Assembly: GCA_964057225.1 (NCBI GenBank)
Contig: OZ059895.1
Coordinates: 9,238,001-9,302,000, forward strand
Reading direction: 5' to 3'
DNA from: Auanema rhodensis
Lineage: Eukaryota > Animalia > Nematoda
DNA length: 64,000 bases
The notes beneath the pieces are model-generated. The model worked only from the letters and a program-made list of their open reading frames with translations, was not told the DNA's origin and searched no databases. Numbering within the stretch: the stretch's first letter is position 1; each line of letters opens with the position of its first letter. A program made the translations under genes and the position numbers. Below are positions 41,074-49,595 of the stretch, piece after piece.

Positions 41074-44000
41074 TCATAAAACATGCATTCGAACGATAAG
41101 CAAGGCCAAGATCAATAGCTGACCTGAGATGGGAGCAGATGATGTCGTTGATGGAGGTACTTCAGATGAAGATAAAGATTCTGCATTCGCCCAACAGTCC
41201 GAACAAGAATCGGTCAGCGAGCGAGTTGATTTCGATGAATAGCTTGTTTTTAGCTAAAACAGTAACCCTAAAGGTTAATTAATTTAAATTTGATTACCTG
41301 ATCTACTGGATTATAATAATCATAAAGGACAATCTGAGCCGGTTTTGTATCAGCAACATTGTAAGATAGATCAGAGTTCAAAGTAAAGCAAATTGGAGTT
41401 TCATCGAGCTAGAAAGTATAAGTATTCAATCATTAAATGAAAAATATATTTACTGAATTGAAATATAAATTCAATAAAGTGTCATCATTCACAAATTCTG
41501 CTCGTTTGATTCCAGATATTTGTGAAATTGAGTTGGATTCTTCTACATCATATCTGAAAATAGGAAAACATATGTAAGAAAGATGATTCTTGTTATTTAC
41601 CTGTATCCAGTGAGTGTTGGAATTTCAGCAACTGCCATATTGGACTGAGAATTACTTCTCGTGTAGCTAAATGAGTAGAATTAAGGTTATATACTATAGA
41701 AGTAGGATAGAATATTGATGAGAATTATCTTACTTGCAACAAAGATCCAATTGGAGACGATTTCCGTTTCGAAGTTCTTTAACATCTTGACTACAGTAGA
41801 ATGGAGCATCATTAACATGTTGATTACGGTGATAGGAATATGATACCTACAGTATCCTTATATAGCTTAATAGAAATAGAATAAACACATACCTGAGCGA
41901 ATACAATTCCTTTTCCTTGAGCTTGAAGTTGCACAGATGAATCAGCATGAGGAATCTGAATAAGATTGAGTTTTATCATTGTTTTGCAATCTATCAATTT
42001 ACTTCATAACTTTGAAGAACAAGAGAATTTATAGGAGATACAGTGAAAAGTTGTGTATCAGCTCCATTTCTAACATTTACGGTAACATTACTATCTGCAC
42101 TATATGCTACTTGACCATAAGATCCTTAAAATAGAATTATATGAAATGAAATATCAAAATTTTTGTTTTACCCAAAGCGAGAAGAGCAACAACAGTATCT
42201 TGTGTTGATGAAAATCCTCCTAAGGCATTACGTTGAGAACTTAACCATCTTACAATTGGGAATCCCTTTAAAACAAATTATTTAATTAGATATGAATAGG
42301 AGATATACCTTATTAGTCTTCTTATCTTCCATGTAACTCAATAAAGCATAAGCAGTAGTTTCAACATCAACTGGACGAGGTTGGAAGAAATATTGTGATT
42401 CTTCCTTTGGCGTTTCACCCTTTTGAGAGCTCCAATGTACAGATCCATCTAAATTAAATATATAGAAAGATTACAAATGATTAGATCTAATACCTGATGA
42501 AGTGATTTGTAATTCCTCAAGTTTTTCCAATGAGGAATCTTTTTTATCGTGATTTGCTAAGTGAAGTGCATATGTTACAACAGAAAGAGCATATGAATCA
42601 TTAGAAATTGAGACAAGGTTTTTCTCCAAAAATTGCAGAGCACCTTCATTTCGAACCTAAGAATTGAAAAAATAATTATTTTTATAAATTAATATAAAGC
42701 TTACTCCATTTTCAAGCAAAGCAATAGTAACATAAGCTGTTAATCCAATACCACCTTCACTGGCACCTCCTTGCATATCTTTATGATGAACCTCACCGTG
42801 CTCAGCAAAGGCTCCAGTTTCCTTAAATTCAATCATTGTAATTATATCGTCAAATATTATAATTCCTACCATCTGTTGAGCATTTAAGAATGCAATACTC
42901 TTTGTTAATATTTCAGGATCAACAAAGATAAAGTCACGAGCTTGAGCAAATGAACGAACAACGAAAGCTGTTAGCCAGGTTGACCCAGCCTTATCACTTT
43001 CTCCGAAAGCAGAAAATGAATTATCACTTCGTCTAAAAAATTTCTTGTTCTTTCTTTCAAAATTATTTGAAAGTTACCGATAAGTTAGTTCACGCTGATA
43101 ACCAGATTCCATATACTTTTTAGCTTTTGCCTCTAAGCCTGGATCAGCTCGATTGATAGCTTTCAAATATCGAAGAACAACAATATTTGGAACAAAGTTC
43201 AACATATTTTGTTCTCCACATCCAAATGGCATACGAACTAGTTTATCAATATTACTTAAAACTGGTCCCATGATATCTCCTAATAATAAAAATCTTTAAA
43301 TCAAAAATGGATGATATCATACCAATAACATCAACTTTTGCTCGTTTAGAACCTTCTACAACATCATCTGGCCATAATAAATCAACTTTAGTCGAATATT
43401 CCGTGCTGTTACTGAGATCAATAACAATAGGAACATTACGATCTACACGATAACCTTCTGGCTATAATGAAAATATTGTAAAACTTTGATAATTTGGTCG
43501 AAATTACTTCAACTCGTAATGGCATTTCAACAGCATCACCAGCTAAAGAAGCTTGAGCTGTAACAGATAGTTCAACCATTCCTATTTGATTAGGAACAAT
43601 AGGGAAATATACAGCCTTGGAAACTCCGCCTCCGGGAACTGACACAATTCGTTGATTATATCCTTTAGGTCCAGATCTAAACTTGAAGTTTATTCTTAAC
43701 GTTTTATCAGAAATCACATACTCTTTACTGATACTTCCATCTTTGTTCATGAATCCAAAACCAGAAGTTTCATCATGCTTCAAGGTAACTGTCACCTTAA
43801 ATGATTGATCAAAACCCGGAACTAATTGTAAGCTTACATCTTGTTCTTGTTCCAGATAGTTGAAAACAAGAACTCTGAGTCCGAATTTCTCACCACGCTT
43901 AACAGAGTATGGCAAATCAAGACGAATGAAGAATGGTCGGAATACACGAAGCTGAATCTCTTTTAGAAACAATTTCTTTCGAGAGTTATACCTTAGCATT

Positions 44001-44907
44001 AGAAGCAGCAATTCCTAACCCGGTTTCATCATTAATAGCAAATGCCGAAGCAACCCAGGATGTGATGGTATCAGGAGCAGTAGCATGATATACAACTTCG
44101 CCATTTTCACTGAAAAATTGGTTTTGCATTTGCTTTGCCCTAAACACAGAGGAAAAATATACACTTTAATCCCTTTCTCTCTATAATATAACTAATAAAA
44201 TATTATATTAACATTAGATATTCTCACATGTTTTTCTAGAGAATTACGTTGATTTGTTGCAAAATGTTTGGTTTTAAATGAAATCTATTTAACCGTTCAA
44301 TTACTATATTATTTGATAAAGGGCCATATGCTACATATTGAATGATTGAGGGCTCAAACCTGGCCTGAAGATCTATCCAAACCCAAGTTTCAGGGAAAAA
44401 TGAACGCAAACGCGGCTCTGCAATATCAAATGCTGTTGCAGCCATAAATGGCGCTCTAGCTACTGCTTCCATGGGCATCATTACAGCATCGTCTAGAACT
44501 CTGGACGATTTCAGATATACGGCAACTGTAAATTCAATCAACTGCTAAGCACTATAGAGATAAGCATATATAGTGAGCTTGGTAAGACTGATAGTAAGAT
44601 CAGAAGTAAGACAGCAGCTGGTAAAGTACTTGGCCATAACGAGTAGATTATGCGACAACACAAGCAAAAACAGCAAACTCAGTCACTGATTTTGAAGAAA
44701 TTCTTGTAATACCACTTATCTCGTGTTTTCTTCAACCAGATTTTCATATTAAAAACATAAAATAATAGAAACGTTGTCAGCTACCAACAGAACAACACGC
44801 GCAGAGAAGAAATAAGTGTTATTAGGAGAAGAAACAACAAAAATTTGACAACAGACATTGATAGATATTTGAATATCTTGATGAATATTTATAGAGAGGG
44901 TGAAAGC

Positions 44908-44949
<42 letters not shown>

Positions 44950-47900
44950 ATATTACCCAGAATCAACCATAATAACCATATTATTCATATATACTTCCCA
45001 TCATCCCGATTCCCTCCTTCCTACTAATGAATTTCGATCGTCGAATTCATTAGTTCTACTGTATTTCGAAAAACAGAAACTCACTTGGATGCAACATCAG
45101 CCCAAATCCATGTTTCCGGAAATTCTGTGCGAACACGTATCGCTGGGCCCTCATCTGGAGATGGTGAAGGGGCTCCTGATCCAAATGCCACCATAGGGCC
45201 TGGACCTCCGGCAACTGCACTGAATACCATTTCAGGCCACACCCCAACTTAAAAAGAAAACCCTCATTACAGAAAGAAATATGAAAAGTAAAATAATTGG
45301 ATGCAGGGTAACAGCAAGGTCAGAAGTAGAGAAGCATAGAATGTTGTAGCAAGACTAGTTCAGTATATAAACTGATCTTTCCAACGATAATCCCAGATAA
45401 TAAGCGTTTTGGGTCGAACTTAGAAGCATAACTCAAGCATGCTATTCACTCCTTTCACAATCACACAATCATATGATGTTTAAAAGATATTCAAGAAAAT
45501 GCCTTACTTGCTGGACCCATTAAACCATACCCAAGTTTCCGGAAAATTCCGGCGAACTATAGGAGGTGAATTAATGCCAAGCGGTGCTGGCGGAGGGGAA
45601 TCCAGTGCTACTCTAGCAACAGCGGGATGAGAGAAAAAAATTCGTTCTCCTGTAAGTAGAGAAGTACTTGTGCAAATGTTAATTCATAATACACCGGATT
45701 TCATCACCCTAAACCCATTAGGACATAAATGACGAAGACAGAAAAAAAGGACAAATTCGAATCATATCATCAATTAACGTAAAACTTTAATTTCAGAAAT
45801 AATTGAAAAGAAACTTAAACAGTCTTTTATATATATTTCATATAAAAACTGAATAAAATCTCTTTAATTTCTAAATTTAAAGTCAAATATATTAACTATT
45901 CACTATAATTATCTAGCACACATTATCTCTGATTTTTCAACAAATTAATATTTTAAAAAAAGGAAAAAAAAGACAAACAACGAAAGCACCGACTTAGAAG
46001 ACATATCTTCCCAGATCCACATTTCCGGGAAGTTTTTACGTATTACAGGTCCGGGAGATGAATCAGAGCTTCGTTCACTGAATTCTGGTACAGGTTGTGG
46101 TCCATCTAAAGGAGCCAACATGTTTAAGTCGACTTTCCTACTGACAGCAGAAAGATGAACAATTCCTAATAAGCAAGCACGTTAACTCTTGCTTGGATGA
46201 ATAAAATAAATTTCAATAAAGATTATTATATTCTCTATCGAGTGTTTTTGCTTAAAAAATCTTTTTTTTCTTTGAAAGAATTTGGAAAGAAAGATGAAGC
46301 TGTAAGTATTAAGACAACTAATAGTGTCTCTGAATAGATGAGGAAAAGGAAGAAGATAAGAAAACCATAACCAATAACCCGAAGAATTAAATTAAAAGTA
46401 AGGAATATGAAGATTAAGATTAAAAACATAAAATATTAGCTAAATACAAATGTTAATAGTTAATAAATAAAAATATAAAATTAATATTAACAAGCAGAAT
46501 TAATTGAATAAAAACAGAAATTGCTTAATAAAGAAGAAAAACTTACTTGGTGGTTCAGGTTCACGATACAGATATGCATCAGTCAATACGACAAGTCCAG
46601 CATTCTGAATATAAGCATGAATTTAGTTAAAACATTGTTTGAAACCTCGAAAATGCTTGCGGCATCTTTGCCTCCAACACCCCACCATGGATTCCAGATG
46701 CTGCGACGACGACGACGACGATCAATTATTCCTTCCCAAGGACGGAAACTGTTACTAAAGCCAGTAGTATCATATTCATCAAGATCACTTTCAACCTAAA
46801 ATTCAACATTTTTAGTATATTTCAAAACTATATGATACCAATTGAGGAGTAATATCATTTCCTGATTTAAGAAGCAATACAGATTGATCTATCGCCAGAA
46901 GTCCAACATATGATCCGGGATCTGCCTGTACACGTACAGATACAGATTCACCAGGTTCACATTGAGCACGATCAATAGAAAGAGTAACCTGAATAATATT
47001 TTCTTATATTTGATAATGATATTGAGTTTTTTACATTGTTACGGAATAATCCATCAACACGGAAATCAGTTGCATCAACTAAAATCTCTTGATTAGATGG
47101 TCTTACAGCATATACAATCAAACGAGATTTAGGTGACATCTAGAATAATTAATAAAGAAAAAAAGAAATATTAGTTTCTTACTTCACTGCTAGCAGGGAA
47201 ACTGATAGTAGCATGTTCAGAATTGACAGGTAATTCCTTTGACAAGACAACAGAACCGCGTGACATAACCTAGAATTGAACTTCGATGTAACTTCAGAAT
47301 ATGATTTTACCTGATATGTCAATACAGAAATGCTTTCAGTTGCTTTCACAGAAAATGACAATGTTTTTCCAACCTCTAGAACTCCTTCATTATCGGCTAC
47401 AATCTGAAGAAAGAAAAACAAATCTGTAAAATGAAAATGCTGCTTCTCTTATACCTGAAGATATGACTTTGATGGTGATTTTCCAGCTTCAACATATAAA
47501 CTACTGTATATAACAGCATTAGTGAAGTTATCTTGTCCTGTTCTATCATAATGAGCCTGAAAATCAACATTGTTTCAAATACAAGTTCAAAAGTCTTTAA
47601 TGCCTCAATCCGAGCAGAAGTGCAGTTAATGGGTGGCTGTAAACTGTGAATAGCACTACCATGAGCATCCAAATCTACGATTTTTATCTAAATAAACTGA
47701 ATTAGATCAAGTTTTAAAGTTTAAACTTGCCTCCTTATCTTCAAGTTGATTTGTAAAATCAGGATTAAATGGATAATTATAATAAGTACTGATCTATAAT
47801 TGAAAAGATACATTTCTATAAAAGAATTTGTAAAACAAACCTGAACTCTACGAGGTACAGATGCTTTAACTGGCATGTCATTCATTTCTTTTAAAGATAT

Positions 47901-49595
47901 AACAATATTGTAGAGCAATCCTGGTTTGAAACTATCACCTTGTTTTTCAAGATCAAGCTTAACATCATGACGATAGGTTGATACCTAAATAATAAAATAT
48001 ATAGATTATAGATTAATATCTTAGTTATATATTACATGAGCTGTTCCATTACGTTCAGTTTCAGTTAGATCTTCAGCAACTGTAGCAACGATTCTGATGC
48101 TTCCACCGCCATACTCTTGGACAAGTTTATGATTTTTCAAATCTTCATTTGAGAATGTGAAAGAAGCTTGTCCCATGTTGTTAAGAACAGCTGTTTTGGT
48201 AATTTGTGTTTCCTCCTCCACCTATAAAAATAAAATAAAAAATTTATAATTTGCATGATTTCAAAAAACCTGAGTTGTTGTTCCGTCCTCATTAACAATA
48301 ATAGGACGAGGAATAGGATGCCAACGATGCCATGGTTGTTCTAAAGTAACTTTAGCTTTTCCAGCTACTCCTTTACCATAAGTATATCTAAATGAAATAA
48401 AAATAAACAAAAAACAAGAAATATTCTTACTTAGCATCCACCAAAATGGTTAATTCATCAGAAACCGTTATGTATGATGGTGATTTAACGTTTACTTCAA
48501 ATTTAGGTAACACATACTATAATTTAATTTTTTTGTGAAATTAAAATGAAAAAAACATTTTCTATTACTTTTTCCACAGTAAATGGTTTGGTGTATCCTA
48601 CACCAGTTTGAGATTTAACAACAATAGACCAGTCTCCAAGAGGAGGTTCAGATGCAAGTTGCAATTCAGAAGAGTATACTCCTAAAAATAATATTAATTT
48701 TAAATAAATTATTTTAATTCAAATACTATTTGTTTTATAAATTTATATTAAAAATTAAAATAATCAAATATTTACCTTTAACAAGTTCTTTTTTCAATTC
48801 TTGAACAATCACATTCTGATTTGGATCTATTATTTTCACATCAACTGTTTCTTTAACAGGTAATAACTCAGGATTTAATATGATTACTCGATATTTAACT
48901 AAAAATTAAAAAAAATTATTTTTTAATAAAAAAAATAAAATTTAACCATCAGCTCCTGGTTTATAGATAGCTTTATCTGTTTGTACAAAGATAGAAACAC
49001 TTTTTTGATGATAACGAATCTCTTTTTCATCTTCAAATAGTAAACGTCCTCCCAAAGTTTCGCAGCGTACATAAGCCTAAATAGCTAAATTATAAAATAT
49101 TTATAAGATATATACTTACCTTATAACTGTTATCAGGTAATAAACCTTCAGCGGGAACTTTATCAATTGTAACAGTTTGAGGAAAACCTTAATCAAAATT
49201 ATAATAATATAGATTTTGAAGTTAACTTTATACCTTGCTTAATGTTATTAATAACTTTAGTAGCTATAGTATCATTTTGCAATGTTCTAATTTCAAAATG
49301 TACAATATGATCATCGTCGGAGCTTTTTAAGATGTTCACAGAAGCAGAATAGGGTAGACCGGGACGCACAACAGAAGGTGCAACAACCATATACGATCCC
49401 AATCTGAATGTAATTCTGATGATTTACTTGATATGCCCATGTACAATACCTTTCTGGTTCTGGAGTTGTTGTACTGACAGGAACCGTGGGAATCAAAGGT
49501 GTTACGGTCCCAATACTGTCATCTGTCTCTGAGGTTTGGCAATAGCCGACACTTAGAAGACTGCATAACAGCAGCACGGTCAATCGATCCCGCAT
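41074..49595 (-). CDS. tep-1: Thioester-containing protein (CD109/alpha-2-macroglobulin family), signal peptide and probable GPI tail
   Basis: Signal peptide [14 protein letters not shown]; [10 protein letters not shown]; YVLPKFEV; furin-type RRRRRS; FPETW bait-flanking motif; thioester motif PFGCGEQNM; HHKDMQGG; GGFSSTQDT; hydrophobic C-terminal tail. Confidence 0.96.
44360..44525 (-). CDS. tep-1: tep-1 alternative bait exon D (166 nt; ...[20 protein letters not shown])
   Basis: TTTACAG acceptor, GTTTG donor, phase 1/2, FPETW motif. Confidence 0.85.
44908..44949. repeat. Compound (TA)n(GA)n microsatellite in a tep-1 bait-cluster intron
   Basis: Directly visible. Confidence 0.9.
45085..45247 (-). 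CDS. tep-1: tep-1 alternative bait exon C (163 nt; ...[21 protein letters not shown])
   Basis: TTTAAG acceptor, GTGAG donor, phase 1/2, FPETW motif. Confidence 0.88.
45508..45649 (-). CDS. tep-1: tep-1 alternative bait exon B (142 nt; ...[20 protein letters not shown])
   Basis: TTACAG acceptor, GTAAG donor, phase 1/2, FPETW motif. Confidence 0.88.
45994..46165 (-). CDS. tep-1: tep-1 alternative bait exon A (172 nt; ...[19 protein letters not shown])
   Basis: AG/GT flanks, phase 1 in and phase 2 out, open frame, FPExW motif. Confidence 0.85.

What the first reader, a model, noticed from the sequence alone, without database searches (positions are those of the whole stretch)
44109..46547. Four mutually exclusive bait-region exons in tep-1: a splice-encoded protease-sensor repertoire
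Seen: between the constitutive exons ending ...YREPEPP (46547) and starting [18 protein letters not shown] (44109) lie four separate exons (45994-46165, 45508-45649, 45085-45247, 44360-44525). Each ends in its own FPE[T/M]W[IV]W motif, which occurs once per A2M-family protein. Lengths 172/142/163/166 are all 3n+1, with phase 1 entry and phase 2 exit, so including one keeps frame while zero, two or three shift it. Their N-terminal parts are unrelated (Pro/Ser-rich, Pro/Ala-rich, Gly/Pro-rich, Met/Ala-rich). Established: this region is the protease-cleaved bait that triggers the thioester, and Drosophila Tep2 diversifies it by alternative splicing. Inference: this nematode makes at least four TEP isoforms tuned to different host or microbial proteases. 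I cannot tell whether this is already annotated in related nematodes.
Basis: partly seen in the sequence, partly recalled or inferred. Interest (0 to 1): 0.85.

Follow-up and report, generated by a model that had tools for sequence, protein, structure and literature searches.

The report
Alternative bait exons in nematode TEP-1
A nematode thioester protein gene (TEP-1/CD109 type) carries four interchangeable exons for its protease-bait segment, and RNA shows at least two used one at a time; this is real, but the same design is known in insects and molluscs and is already annotated in other nematodes.

Summary
Four tandem exons lie on the minus strand: A 46165-45994, B 45649-45508, C 45247-45085 and D 44525-44360. 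They sit between constitutive exons ending at 46547 and starting at 44109. Each is 3n+1 long, open only in the required frame, and ends in its own FPExWxW motif. No other such motif occurs in the 64 kb window.

Assembled RNA from four runs joins 46547>C>44109 in all four runs and 46547>D>44109 in two runs. Exon A is joined to 44109 once, at low depth.

Only single inclusion keeps the reading frame. Skipping, or including any two, three or all four cassettes, gives a premature stop.

The gene is the nematode TEP-1/CD109 orthologue, and the cassette encodes the end of the bait region plus the first strand of the A2M domain.

The design is not new. Parascaris (4), Brugia, Acanthocheilonema and Haemonchus (2 each) already have annotated alternative isoforms. 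My scans of genomic loci found 7 cassettes in Pristionchus and 9 in Necator. Caenorhabditis has one. I found no paper describing this in nematodes. Tuning of isoforms to different proteases remains an inference.

The parts
41074..49595 (-). Approximate coding span of the TEP-1/CD109-type gene, from the signal-peptide ATG ([14 protein letters not shown]...) to the stop after a hydrophobic C-terminal tail
   Evidence: Minus-strand ORF pieces. tblastn of nematode TEP-1 orthologues covers 49399-41131. Pfam hits: MG3, A2M_BRD, A2M, TED_complement, A2M_recep.
46646..46796 (-). Constitutive exon holding a polybasic RRRRRR/S site (46720-46703) and the conserved [11 protein letters not shown] segment
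   Evidence: RNA contig pieces and the joint 46646>46604 in all 4 runs. Translation. Orthologues carry RRKRS or RKKRS at the same place.
46547..46604 (-). Constitutive exon ending ...[13 protein letters not shown], which leaves one base of a split codon (phase 1)
   Evidence: Joints from 46547 to 45247 and to 44525.
45994..46165 (-). Cassette exon A, 172 nt (...[20 protein letters not shown])
   Evidence: Open frame and splice sites. Joint 45994>44109 in run X1 at depth 3.5. That contig starts at 46163, so the acceptor joint itself was not seen.
45508..45649 (-). Cassette exon B, 142 nt ([11 protein letters not shown]...[17 protein letters not shown])
   Evidence: Open frame, ttacag acceptor and GTAAGG donor, 49 % G+C. 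No spliced RNA evidence. One 172-nt contig (45342-45513) runs from the last 6 nt of the exon into the intron. The most similar cassettes elsewhere are Haemonchus P0157 and Necator RVFF...IRRNFPETW.
45085..45247 (-). Cassette exon C, 163 nt (Gly/Ala/Pro-rich, ...[18 protein letters not shown]); the dominant form in the RNA contigs
   Evidence: Joints 46547>45247 and 45085>44109 in all four runs. It lies inside 5 kb transcript contigs in X1 and X3.
44360..44525 (-). Cassette exon D, 166 nt (Met/Ala-rich, ...[17 protein letters not shown])
   Evidence: Joints 46547>44525 and 44360>44109 in runs X2 and X4, as 223-nt contigs parallel to the 220-nt exon C contigs.
43992..44109 (-). Constitutive exon starting with the base that completes the split codon, then [18 protein letters not shown] (A2M domain)
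   Evidence: Pfam A2M profile positions 11-50.
43209..43223 (-). Thioester motif GCGEQ
   Evidence: Translation of ORF 43295-43077. Pfam TED_complement, E 2e-21.
45023..45054 (-). 14-bp hairpin in the intron, 30-60 nt downstream of the exon C donor
   Evidence: RNA fold -13 kcal/mol, z -3.9 against shuffles. Function unknown.
44993..45025 (-). Purine-rich intron segment that can pair in two parts with the 5' half of exon B (45637-45585)
   Evidence: RNAduplex -31.5 kcal/mol. About 3 % of 824 control windows of the same pre-mRNA pair as well or better. Suggestive only.

Best explanation
This is the TEP-1/CD109 orthologue of a nematode whose nearest relatives here are Strongylida. The protein is secreted, carries a thioester, belongs to the alpha-2-macroglobulin superfamily, and probably has a GPI anchor.

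Between the bait-region domain and the A2M domain, the gene holds four tandem, homologous cassette exons that are spliced in one at a time. Each supplies about 30-45 variable residues (the C-terminal half of the bait or hinge stretch) followed by the conserved R..FPExWxW strand that begins the A2M domain. The mature proteins therefore differ only in the segment that proteases cut to trigger the thioester.

Shown: the exon anatomy, single inclusion of C and of D between the same flanking exons, A joined downstream, and loss of the reading frame for every other combination.

Inferred: (1) wrongly spliced mRNAs are removed by nonsense-mediated decay, as in C. elegans exon clusters whose lengths are not multiples of three; (2) exon choice is regulated, because the C:D depth ratio differs between samples; (3) the isoforms differ in which proteases cleave them.
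For: - Sequence anatomy.
- Spliced RNA contigs with canonical CT..AC (GT..AG on the minus strand) joints at 100 % identity. These are 46547>45247 with 45085>44109 in 4 runs, 46547>44525 with 44360>44109 in 2 runs, and 45994>44109 in 1 run. No cassette-to-cassette joint was seen.
- Only single inclusion stays open.
- Pfam: A2M_BRD ends in the exon 47003-46815 and A2M starts in exon 44109; TED and A2M_recep lie downstream. The thioester motif GCGEQ is present.
- The orthologue's best solved relative is human CD109 (E 4e-50). The alignment breaks across the variable stretch and restarts at VRKHFPETWIW.
- The same architecture is annotated as alternative isoforms in Parascaris, Brugia, A. viteae and Haemonchus. 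It is also present in genomic loci of Pristionchus (7), Necator (9), Gnathostoma (3 or more), Strongyloides (2) and Bursaphelenchus (2).
- CD109 is a bait-triggered protease inhibitor (PMC12927315).
- NMD enforces mutually exclusive (ME) splicing for non-3n clusters in C. elegans (PMC4165533).
Against: - Exon B was never seen spliced, and the acceptor joint of A was not seen.
- The RNA evidence is assembler contigs from four runs of one study. Contigs drop rare variants, and their depths are poor measures of expression.
- No test of NMD, of protease cleavage or of regulation was possible.
- No docking/selector pairing signal above chance was found.
- Searches with the A and B peptides found no database protein.
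Confidence: 0.82

Rival explanations
1. The working repertoire is smaller than four. Exon B, and perhaps A, would be a decaying or essentially unused duplicate, and the gene in practice toggles between C and D.
For: B has no spliced support. A has one low-depth contig (depth 3.5 against 115 for C in the same run) and the weakest donor, GTCGGT. Peptide searches for A and B found nothing.
Against: - B keeps a 47-codon open frame in an AT-rich genome. My rough estimate is that this happens by chance about 2-3 % of the time.
- B also has the best donor of the four (GTAAGG), an intact R..FPETWVW motif and exon-like G+C of 49 %.
- Cassettes of the RVFF...IRRNFPETW type are annotated in Haemonchus and present in Necator.
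- Contigs from four runs of one study cannot show absence.
Confidence: 0.25
2. The isoforms are real but serve endogenous, stage-, sex- or tissue-specific roles rather than sensing host or microbial proteases. Examples would be matching the worm's own proteases or matrix and signalling partners, as reported for CD109 and for the sex-specific gonad isoforms of scallop TEP.
For: - The C:D ratio differs sharply between samples of one study: D is absent from the X1 and X3 contigs, but is above C in X2 and close to it in X4.
- Scallop TEP isoforms are sex-specific in gonads (cited in PMC7016707).
- CD109 has signalling roles (PMC12927315).
Against: Sample identities are coded, so the axis of regulation is unknown. 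In snail, shrimp and scallop some isoforms respond to immune challenge. The two readings do not exclude each other.
Confidence: 0.4
3. This is not alternative splicing at all. The parallel contigs would come from paralogous genes, haplotypes or contaminating genomic DNA.
For: The run type is only guessed as RNA, and the tool warns that DNA can be present.
Against: All pieces match this one locus with 0 differences and skip 250-2021 nt exactly at GT..AG borders. The 5 kb contigs are fully spliced. The cassettes lie in tandem inside one gene, and there is no second copy in the window.
Confidence: 0.02

Closest known systems
Annotated TEP-1 (TEP1-F) isoforms of other nematodes: Parascaris univalens (A0A914ZVE4, ZUN3, ZX28, ZUN5), Brugia malayi BM_BM11471, Acanthocheilonema viteae, Haemonchus contortus (A0A7I4XSE1, XRN4)
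   Same: The gene is orthologous and the cassette sits at the same position. In Parascaris it follows the identical [13 protein letters not shown]. Each alternative ends in R..FPE[ST]W[IVL]W, and the same downstream exon follows (GEAxY...PDTITSW).
   Different: The number of cassettes differs: 2 in filariae and Haemonchus annotation, and 4 in Parascaris and here. The variable parts are barely alignable between species. These are database annotations. I found no paper describing them.
Drosophila Tep2, scallop (Chlamys/Azumapecten farreri) TEP, Biomphalaria BgTEP2 and BgCD109, shrimp A2M-2: alternatively spliced bait or hypervariable exons
   Same: Tandem mutually exclusive exons encode the hypervariable central region. 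The lengths and sequences vary and the C-terminal residues are conserved. Reported numbers are 5, 6, 12 and 8 cassettes (PMC7016707). BgCD109 and the scallop TEPs fall in the same CD109-like group in the homologue search.
   Different: The phyla differ. In those systems isoform-specific tissue, sex or challenge expression was measured. Here only depth differences between four coded samples are available.
Caenorhabditis TEP-1 (ZK337.1; C. elegans O46015, Q7JKM0, Q7YTU0; C. briggsae; C. bovis)
   Same: It is the orthologous gene with the same domain order. The bait region is also varied by splicing.
   Different: There is only one FPHTWIW exon in the C. bovis locus. The isoforms differ by small optional segments upstream (ERRLNTPGGLT, GTFMRRNK or none), not by exchange of whole cassettes. 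tep-1 is not in the C. elegans catalogue of mutually exclusive exons (PMC4165533).
Human CD109 (PDB 9fx2, 9fx3, 8s3o)
   Same: It is the best solved relative of the nematode orthologue (E 4e-50). Shared features are the VRKHFPETWIW strand, a thioester, bait-triggered protease conjugation and a GPI anchor.
   Different: I saw no sign of a cassette array in the sources used here (not checked in the human gene). The furin site of CD109 lies near the C-terminus, whereas the nematode polybasic site lies about 60 residues before the cassette.
Dscam exon 6-type docking site/selector control of mutually exclusive exons
   Same: A cluster of more than two mutually exclusive exons.
   Different: No shared selector, and no docking complementarity above shuffled controls. 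There is only one two-part exon B/intron duplex of borderline rank.

Membership tests
Alpha-2-macroglobulin / TEP / CD109 thioester protein superfamily | Domain series MG - bait region domain - A2M - thioester domain - receptor-binding domain | tested here: met
   Pfam hits in order along the minus strand: MG3 (48449-48264), A2M_BRD (47003-46815), A2M (44165-43439), TED_complement (43295-42285), A2M_recep (41408-41271).
Alpha-2-macroglobulin / TEP / CD109 thioester protein superfamily | Thioester motif GCGEQ | tested here: met
   [11 protein letters not shown] is read in ORF 43295-43077.
Alpha-2-macroglobulin / TEP / CD109 thioester protein superfamily | One FPETW-type strand per protein, directly after the bait region | tested here: met
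   Correctly modelled orthologues carry one such motif each. The alignment to solved CD109 restarts at VRKHFPETWIW. Each cassette here carries exactly one.
CD109 subgroup (GPI-anchored) | C-terminal GPI-attachment signal | tested here: inconclusive
   The last exon ends in a Ser/Thr-rich stretch followed by the hydrophobic tail [16 protein letters not shown]. No GPI predictor was run.
Mutually exclusive bait-exon arrays of invertebrate TEP/CD109 genes | Tandem homologous exons with the same phase and their own splice sites | tested here: met
   8 columns are invariant, including R, FPE, W and W. All four are 3n+1.
Mutually exclusive bait-exon arrays of invertebrate TEP/CD109 genes | Exactly one cassette per mature mRNA | tested here: met
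   Met for C and D, with both joints seen. Half met for A, with the donor joint only. Not observed for B. No cassette-to-cassette joint was seen. All other combinations hit a stop.
Mutually exclusive bait-exon arrays of invertebrate TEP/CD109 genes | Regulated, isoform-specific expression | tested here: inconclusive
   D is absent from the contigs of X1 and X3, but is above C in X2 and close to C in X4. Contig depth is a poor measure and the samples are coded.
Mutually exclusive bait-exon arrays of invertebrate TEP/CD109 genes | Isoforms differ in protease susceptibility or target binding | not testable with these tools
   This needs recombinant isoforms and protease panels.
NMD-policed mutually exclusive exons (C. 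elegans non-3n clusters) | Multiple inclusion or skipping creates premature stops | tested here: met
   skipping and every 2-, 3- or 4-exon combination stops within 50-99 codons of the start of the test construct.
NMD-policed mutually exclusive exons (C. elegans non-3n clusters) | Aberrant isoforms rise when NMD is disabled | not testable with these tools
   This needs smg knock-down or mutants.
Docking-site/selector RNA pairing (Dscam exon 6 type) | One docking site complementary to a selector next to each cassette | tested here: not met
   No 7- or 8-mer of the first or last intron has complements in all three inner introns beyond shuffled expectation. Whole-intron duplex energies are within the shuffled range. 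No long inverted repeats were found.

The most novel reading that the evidence does not exclude
The bait-exon array is an ancestral feature of nematode, and perhaps bilaterian, CD109-type genes that evolves by rapid birth and death of cassettes. Counts seen here run from 1 in Caenorhabditis to 2 in filariae, Strongyloides and Bursaphelenchus, 4 here and in Parascaris, 7 in Pristionchus and 9 in Necator. Under this reading the textbook model C. elegans has secondarily lost a splice-encoded repertoire of protease sensors. That repertoire would be largest in some parasites and would be switched between samples (C against D here), possibly with the help of the exon B/intron duplex and the hairpin after exon C.
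Probability: 0.4. Interest if true: 0.55.

Novelty: new member of a known kind. Interest (0 to 1): 0.36.

Why it matters
It gives a clean, RNA-supported case of mutually exclusive splicing that changes only the protease-sensing segment of a thioester protein. It also shows that this design, known from flies, scallops and snails, is widespread in nematodes but missing from Caenorhabditis, the nematode where TEP-1 would normally be studied.

A practical point follows for annotation. Several public gene models fuse neighbouring cassettes into one protein: Necator, Steinernema, Halicephalobus, Globodera, Panagrellus and Rhabditophanes. Knowing the one-of-N rule would correct them.

For parasites, cassette number and usage would be a simple read-out to test against host or microbial protease exposure.

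Tried and rejected
1. Docking/selector RNA pairing as the exclusion mechanism. The inverted-repeat search, whole-intron duplex energies against shuffles (the first attempt timed out) and shared complementary k-mers gave nothing above chance.

2. One-to-one orthology of cassettes A-D with cassettes of other species. Local alignments of the variable parts against shuffles and a maximum-likelihood tree of 35 cassettes are weak. C is nearest Pristionchus cassette 3 (48 %). D groups with Pristionchus cassette 4 (support 85/82). B is nearest the Haemonchus and Necator RVFF type. None of these groupings is robust.

3. Direct protein evidence for the A and B isoforms. Word-index searches with each peptide returned nothing. 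A blank here says little.

4. Pfam on the cassettes alone gave no hit. This is expected for about 50 residues, of which only about 10 are conserved.

5. Loci for Brugia (P0173), Trichinella (P0213) and Steinernema (P0164) could not be fetched by exact-product look-up.

6. Species identification. The RNA runs are coded, and exon identities only place the organism nearest Strongylida (64-86 %).

7. Papers on nematode TEP-1 splicing. None were found.
Full report
**What is in the sequence**

On the minus strand, the exon ending ...[13 protein letters not shown] stops at 46547, leaving one base of a split codon. The exon starting at 44109 supplies the last base of a split codon and then reads [18 protein letters not shown].

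Four exon-like blocks lie between them:
- A, 46165-45994, 172 nt
- B, 45649-45508, 142 nt
- C, 45247-45085, 163 nt
- D, 44525-44360, 166 nt

Each has an AG acceptor and a GT donor and is 3n+1 long. Each is open only in the frame dictated by its neighbours, and each ends in R..FPE[T/M]W[IV]W. A six-frame scan of the whole 64 kb window finds this motif only at these four places. The blocks are 42-54 % G+C, against 23-34 % for the introns between them. An alignment of the four peptides shows eight invariant columns near the C-terminal end and little similarity before them.

**The gene**

Minus-strand ORF pieces run from about 49595 (signal peptide [14 protein letters not shown]...) to about 41074 (a Ser/Thr-rich stretch followed by a hydrophobic tail). 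They match Pfam MG3, A2M_BRD, A2M, TED_complement and A2M_recep, in that order. The thioester motif GCGEQ is at 43223-43209.

A2M_BRD ends in the exon 47003-46815, and A2M profile position 11 starts in the exon at 44109. The cassettes therefore fill the gap between the bait-region domain and the A2M domain.

An exhaustive HMMER search with a constitutive exon, followed by a homologue search with a full-length hit, identified the gene as the nematode TEP-1 ('TEP1-F', CD109 antigen) orthologue. By exon identity the nearest relatives are Strongylida (64-86 %), so this is probably a clade V nematode.

The best solved relative of a Parascaris orthologue is human CD109 (E 4e-50). The alignment covers the bait-region domain, breaks over about 95 residues, and resumes exactly at VRKHFPETWIW. 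Each cassette therefore encodes the C-terminal half of the unalignable bait stretch plus the first strand of the next domain. CD109 is a protease inhibitor: bait cleavage triggers a conformational change and thioester conjugation of the protease (PMC12927315).

**RNA evidence**

Four runs of one study (stored as assembler contigs) hold about 15 % of the sampled words of the 2.7 kb stretch, roughly what the constitutive exons plus one cassette would give. Laid on 43900-46800, the contigs match with no differences and skip introns exactly at GT..AG borders.

- Exon C: the joints 46547>45247 and 45085>44109 occur in all four runs. In X1 and X3 exon C sits inside 5 kb transcript contigs.
- Exon D: the joints 46547>44525 and 44360>44109 occur in X2 and X4. 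There the assembler produced parallel short contigs of 223 nt (27 + 166 + 30, with D) and 220 nt (27 + 163 + 30, with C). That is the signature of two alternative paths between the same flanks.
- Exon A: a 197-nt contig in X1 joins 45994 to 44109 at depth 3.5. It starts at 46163, two bases inside the exon, so its acceptor joint was not observed.
- Exon B: no spliced contig was found. A 172-nt piece (45342-45513) runs from the last bases of B into the intron and is not evidence of use.
- No joint links two cassettes.

D is missing from X1 and X3, but its depth is above C's in X2 (7.9 against 3.2) and close to it in X4 (29.9 against 36.2). This hints at regulated choice. Contig depth is a weak measure, however, and the samples are coded.

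**Why one at a time**

I joined the flanking exons with every subset of cassettes. Only the four single inclusions stay open. Skipping, every pair, every triple and also all four together run into a stop within 50-99 codons, because a second cassette is entered in the wrong phase.

In C. elegans, 14 of 19 mutually exclusive clusters with non-3n exons depend at least partly on nonsense-mediated decay (PMC4165533). The same policing is the natural inference here, but it is untested.

The introns between cassettes are 260-559 nt, too long for steric exclusion. I found no docking/selector complementarity above shuffled controls.

Two local RNA features deserve a test:
- A 14-bp hairpin lies 30-60 nt after the exon C donor (-13 kcal/mol, z -3.9).
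- A two-part duplex forms between the 5' half of exon B and a purine-rich intron segment after exon C (-31.5 kcal/mol). It ranks at about the 3rd percentile of 824 control windows. This duplex is the subject of another first-stage note, s1-379036. It is suggestive, not established.

**Comparison with what is known**

Alternative, mutually exclusive bait or hypervariable exons are well described in other invertebrates (PMC7016707):
- Drosophila Tep2: 5 isoforms
- scallop TEP: 6 exons, with sex-specific and challenge-specific use
- Biomphalaria BgTEP2: 12 exons
- Biomphalaria BgCD109: 8 predicted, 4 seen
- shrimp A2M-2

I found no paper on this in nematodes, but public annotations already contain it:
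- Parascaris univalens TEP1-F isoforms carry four different cassettes after the identical ...[13 protein letters not shown].
- Brugia malayi, Acanthocheilonema viteae and Haemonchus contortus each have two annotated alternatives. For Wuchereria only one clean cassette is annotated, plus a model that fuses part of a second onto it.

I scanned genomic loci for cassette-type exons between the two conserved anchors:

| Species | Cassettes |
|---|---|
| Caenorhabditis bovis | 1 |
| A. viteae | 2 |
| Strongyloides ratti | 2 |
| Bursaphelenchus okinawaensis | 2 |
| Gnathostoma spinigerum (truncated contig) | at least 3 |
| Pristionchus fissidentatus | 7 |
| Necator americanus (over 17 kb) | 9 |

All but one of these cassettes (one Necator cassette gave no model) can be modelled as 3n+1 with the same phases.

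Caenorhabditis instead varies the bait by small optional segments in front of a single FPHTWIW exon, and tep-1 is absent from the C. elegans catalogue of mutually exclusive exons. Several public models wrongly concatenate cassettes: Necator P0320, Steinernema P0235, Halicephalobus P0163, Globodera P0175, Panagrellus P0328 and Rhabditophanes P0183.

Orthology of individual cassettes across species is weak. C is nearest Pristionchus cassette 3. D groups with Pristionchus cassette 4 (support 85/82). B resembles the Haemonchus and Necator RVFF...IRRNFPETW type. Necator shows recent local duplications. The tree as a whole is poorly resolved. The picture fits birth-and-death evolution of cassettes with fast divergence of the variable part.

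**Verdict**

This is a genuine mutually exclusive bait-exon array in a nematode TEP-1/CD109 gene, with two isoforms fully documented, a third half documented, and the fourth (B) still only predicted.

It is a new member of a known kind: known in arthropods and molluscs, and already annotated but apparently undescribed in nematodes. The functional claim, that isoforms are tuned to different proteases, rests on analogy and needs biochemistry.

Noticed in passing
window 46720-46703 (minus strand): Six consecutive Arg codons followed by Ser (RRRRRR/S) lie about 60 residues before the cassette. The position is conserved as RRKRS or RKKRS in other nematode TEP-1 proteins. It looks like a furin-type processing site, which would place the variable segment near the new N-terminus of the second chain, much as the activation site of complement C3 lies after its RRRR linker (my recollection, not tested).
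   Followed up: partly
window 41253-41077 (minus strand): The last coding exon ends in a Ser/Thr-rich stretch and the hydrophobic tail [16 protein letters not shown]. This pattern is expected for a GPI-anchor signal, as in CD109. No predictor was run.
   Followed up: no
window 45054-45023 (minus strand): A near-perfect 14-bp hairpin lies in the intron just downstream of the exon C donor (-13 kcal/mol, z -3.9). It could be a splicing element or the remnant of a small palindromic insertion.
   Followed up: partly
window 45637-45585 with 45025-44993 (minus strand): A two-part duplex can form between the pyrimidine-rich 5' half of exon B and a purine-rich intron segment after exon C (-31.5 kcal/mol). 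About 3 % of control windows pair as well. If real, it could mask B or loop out B and C.
   Followed up: partly
window 44899-44958: A (TA)n(GA)n microsatellite lies in the intron between cassettes C and D. The read tool skipped it as a repeat.
   Followed up: no
L007 12505-29447 (Necator americanus), L004 5272-9088 (Pristionchus fissidentatus): These loci hold large cassette arrays: 9 candidates in Necator, three of them recent duplicates ending VKIRTEFPESWIV, and 7 in Pristionchus. Public protein models for Necator, Steinernema, Halicephalobus, Globodera, Panagrellus and Rhabditophanes fuse two or more cassettes into one protein, which is probably an annotation error.
   Followed up: partly
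window about 54530-52877 and 61011-60568 (minus strand): ORF pieces of a CDK-like protein kinase (…[11 protein letters not shown]…, …[13 protein letters not shown]…) and of a RING-finger protein (…CAICIMEMVEEARVTPCKHYFHGSCLKKWL…) lie upstream of the TEP gene. They are ordinary neighbours and were not examined.
   Followed up: no
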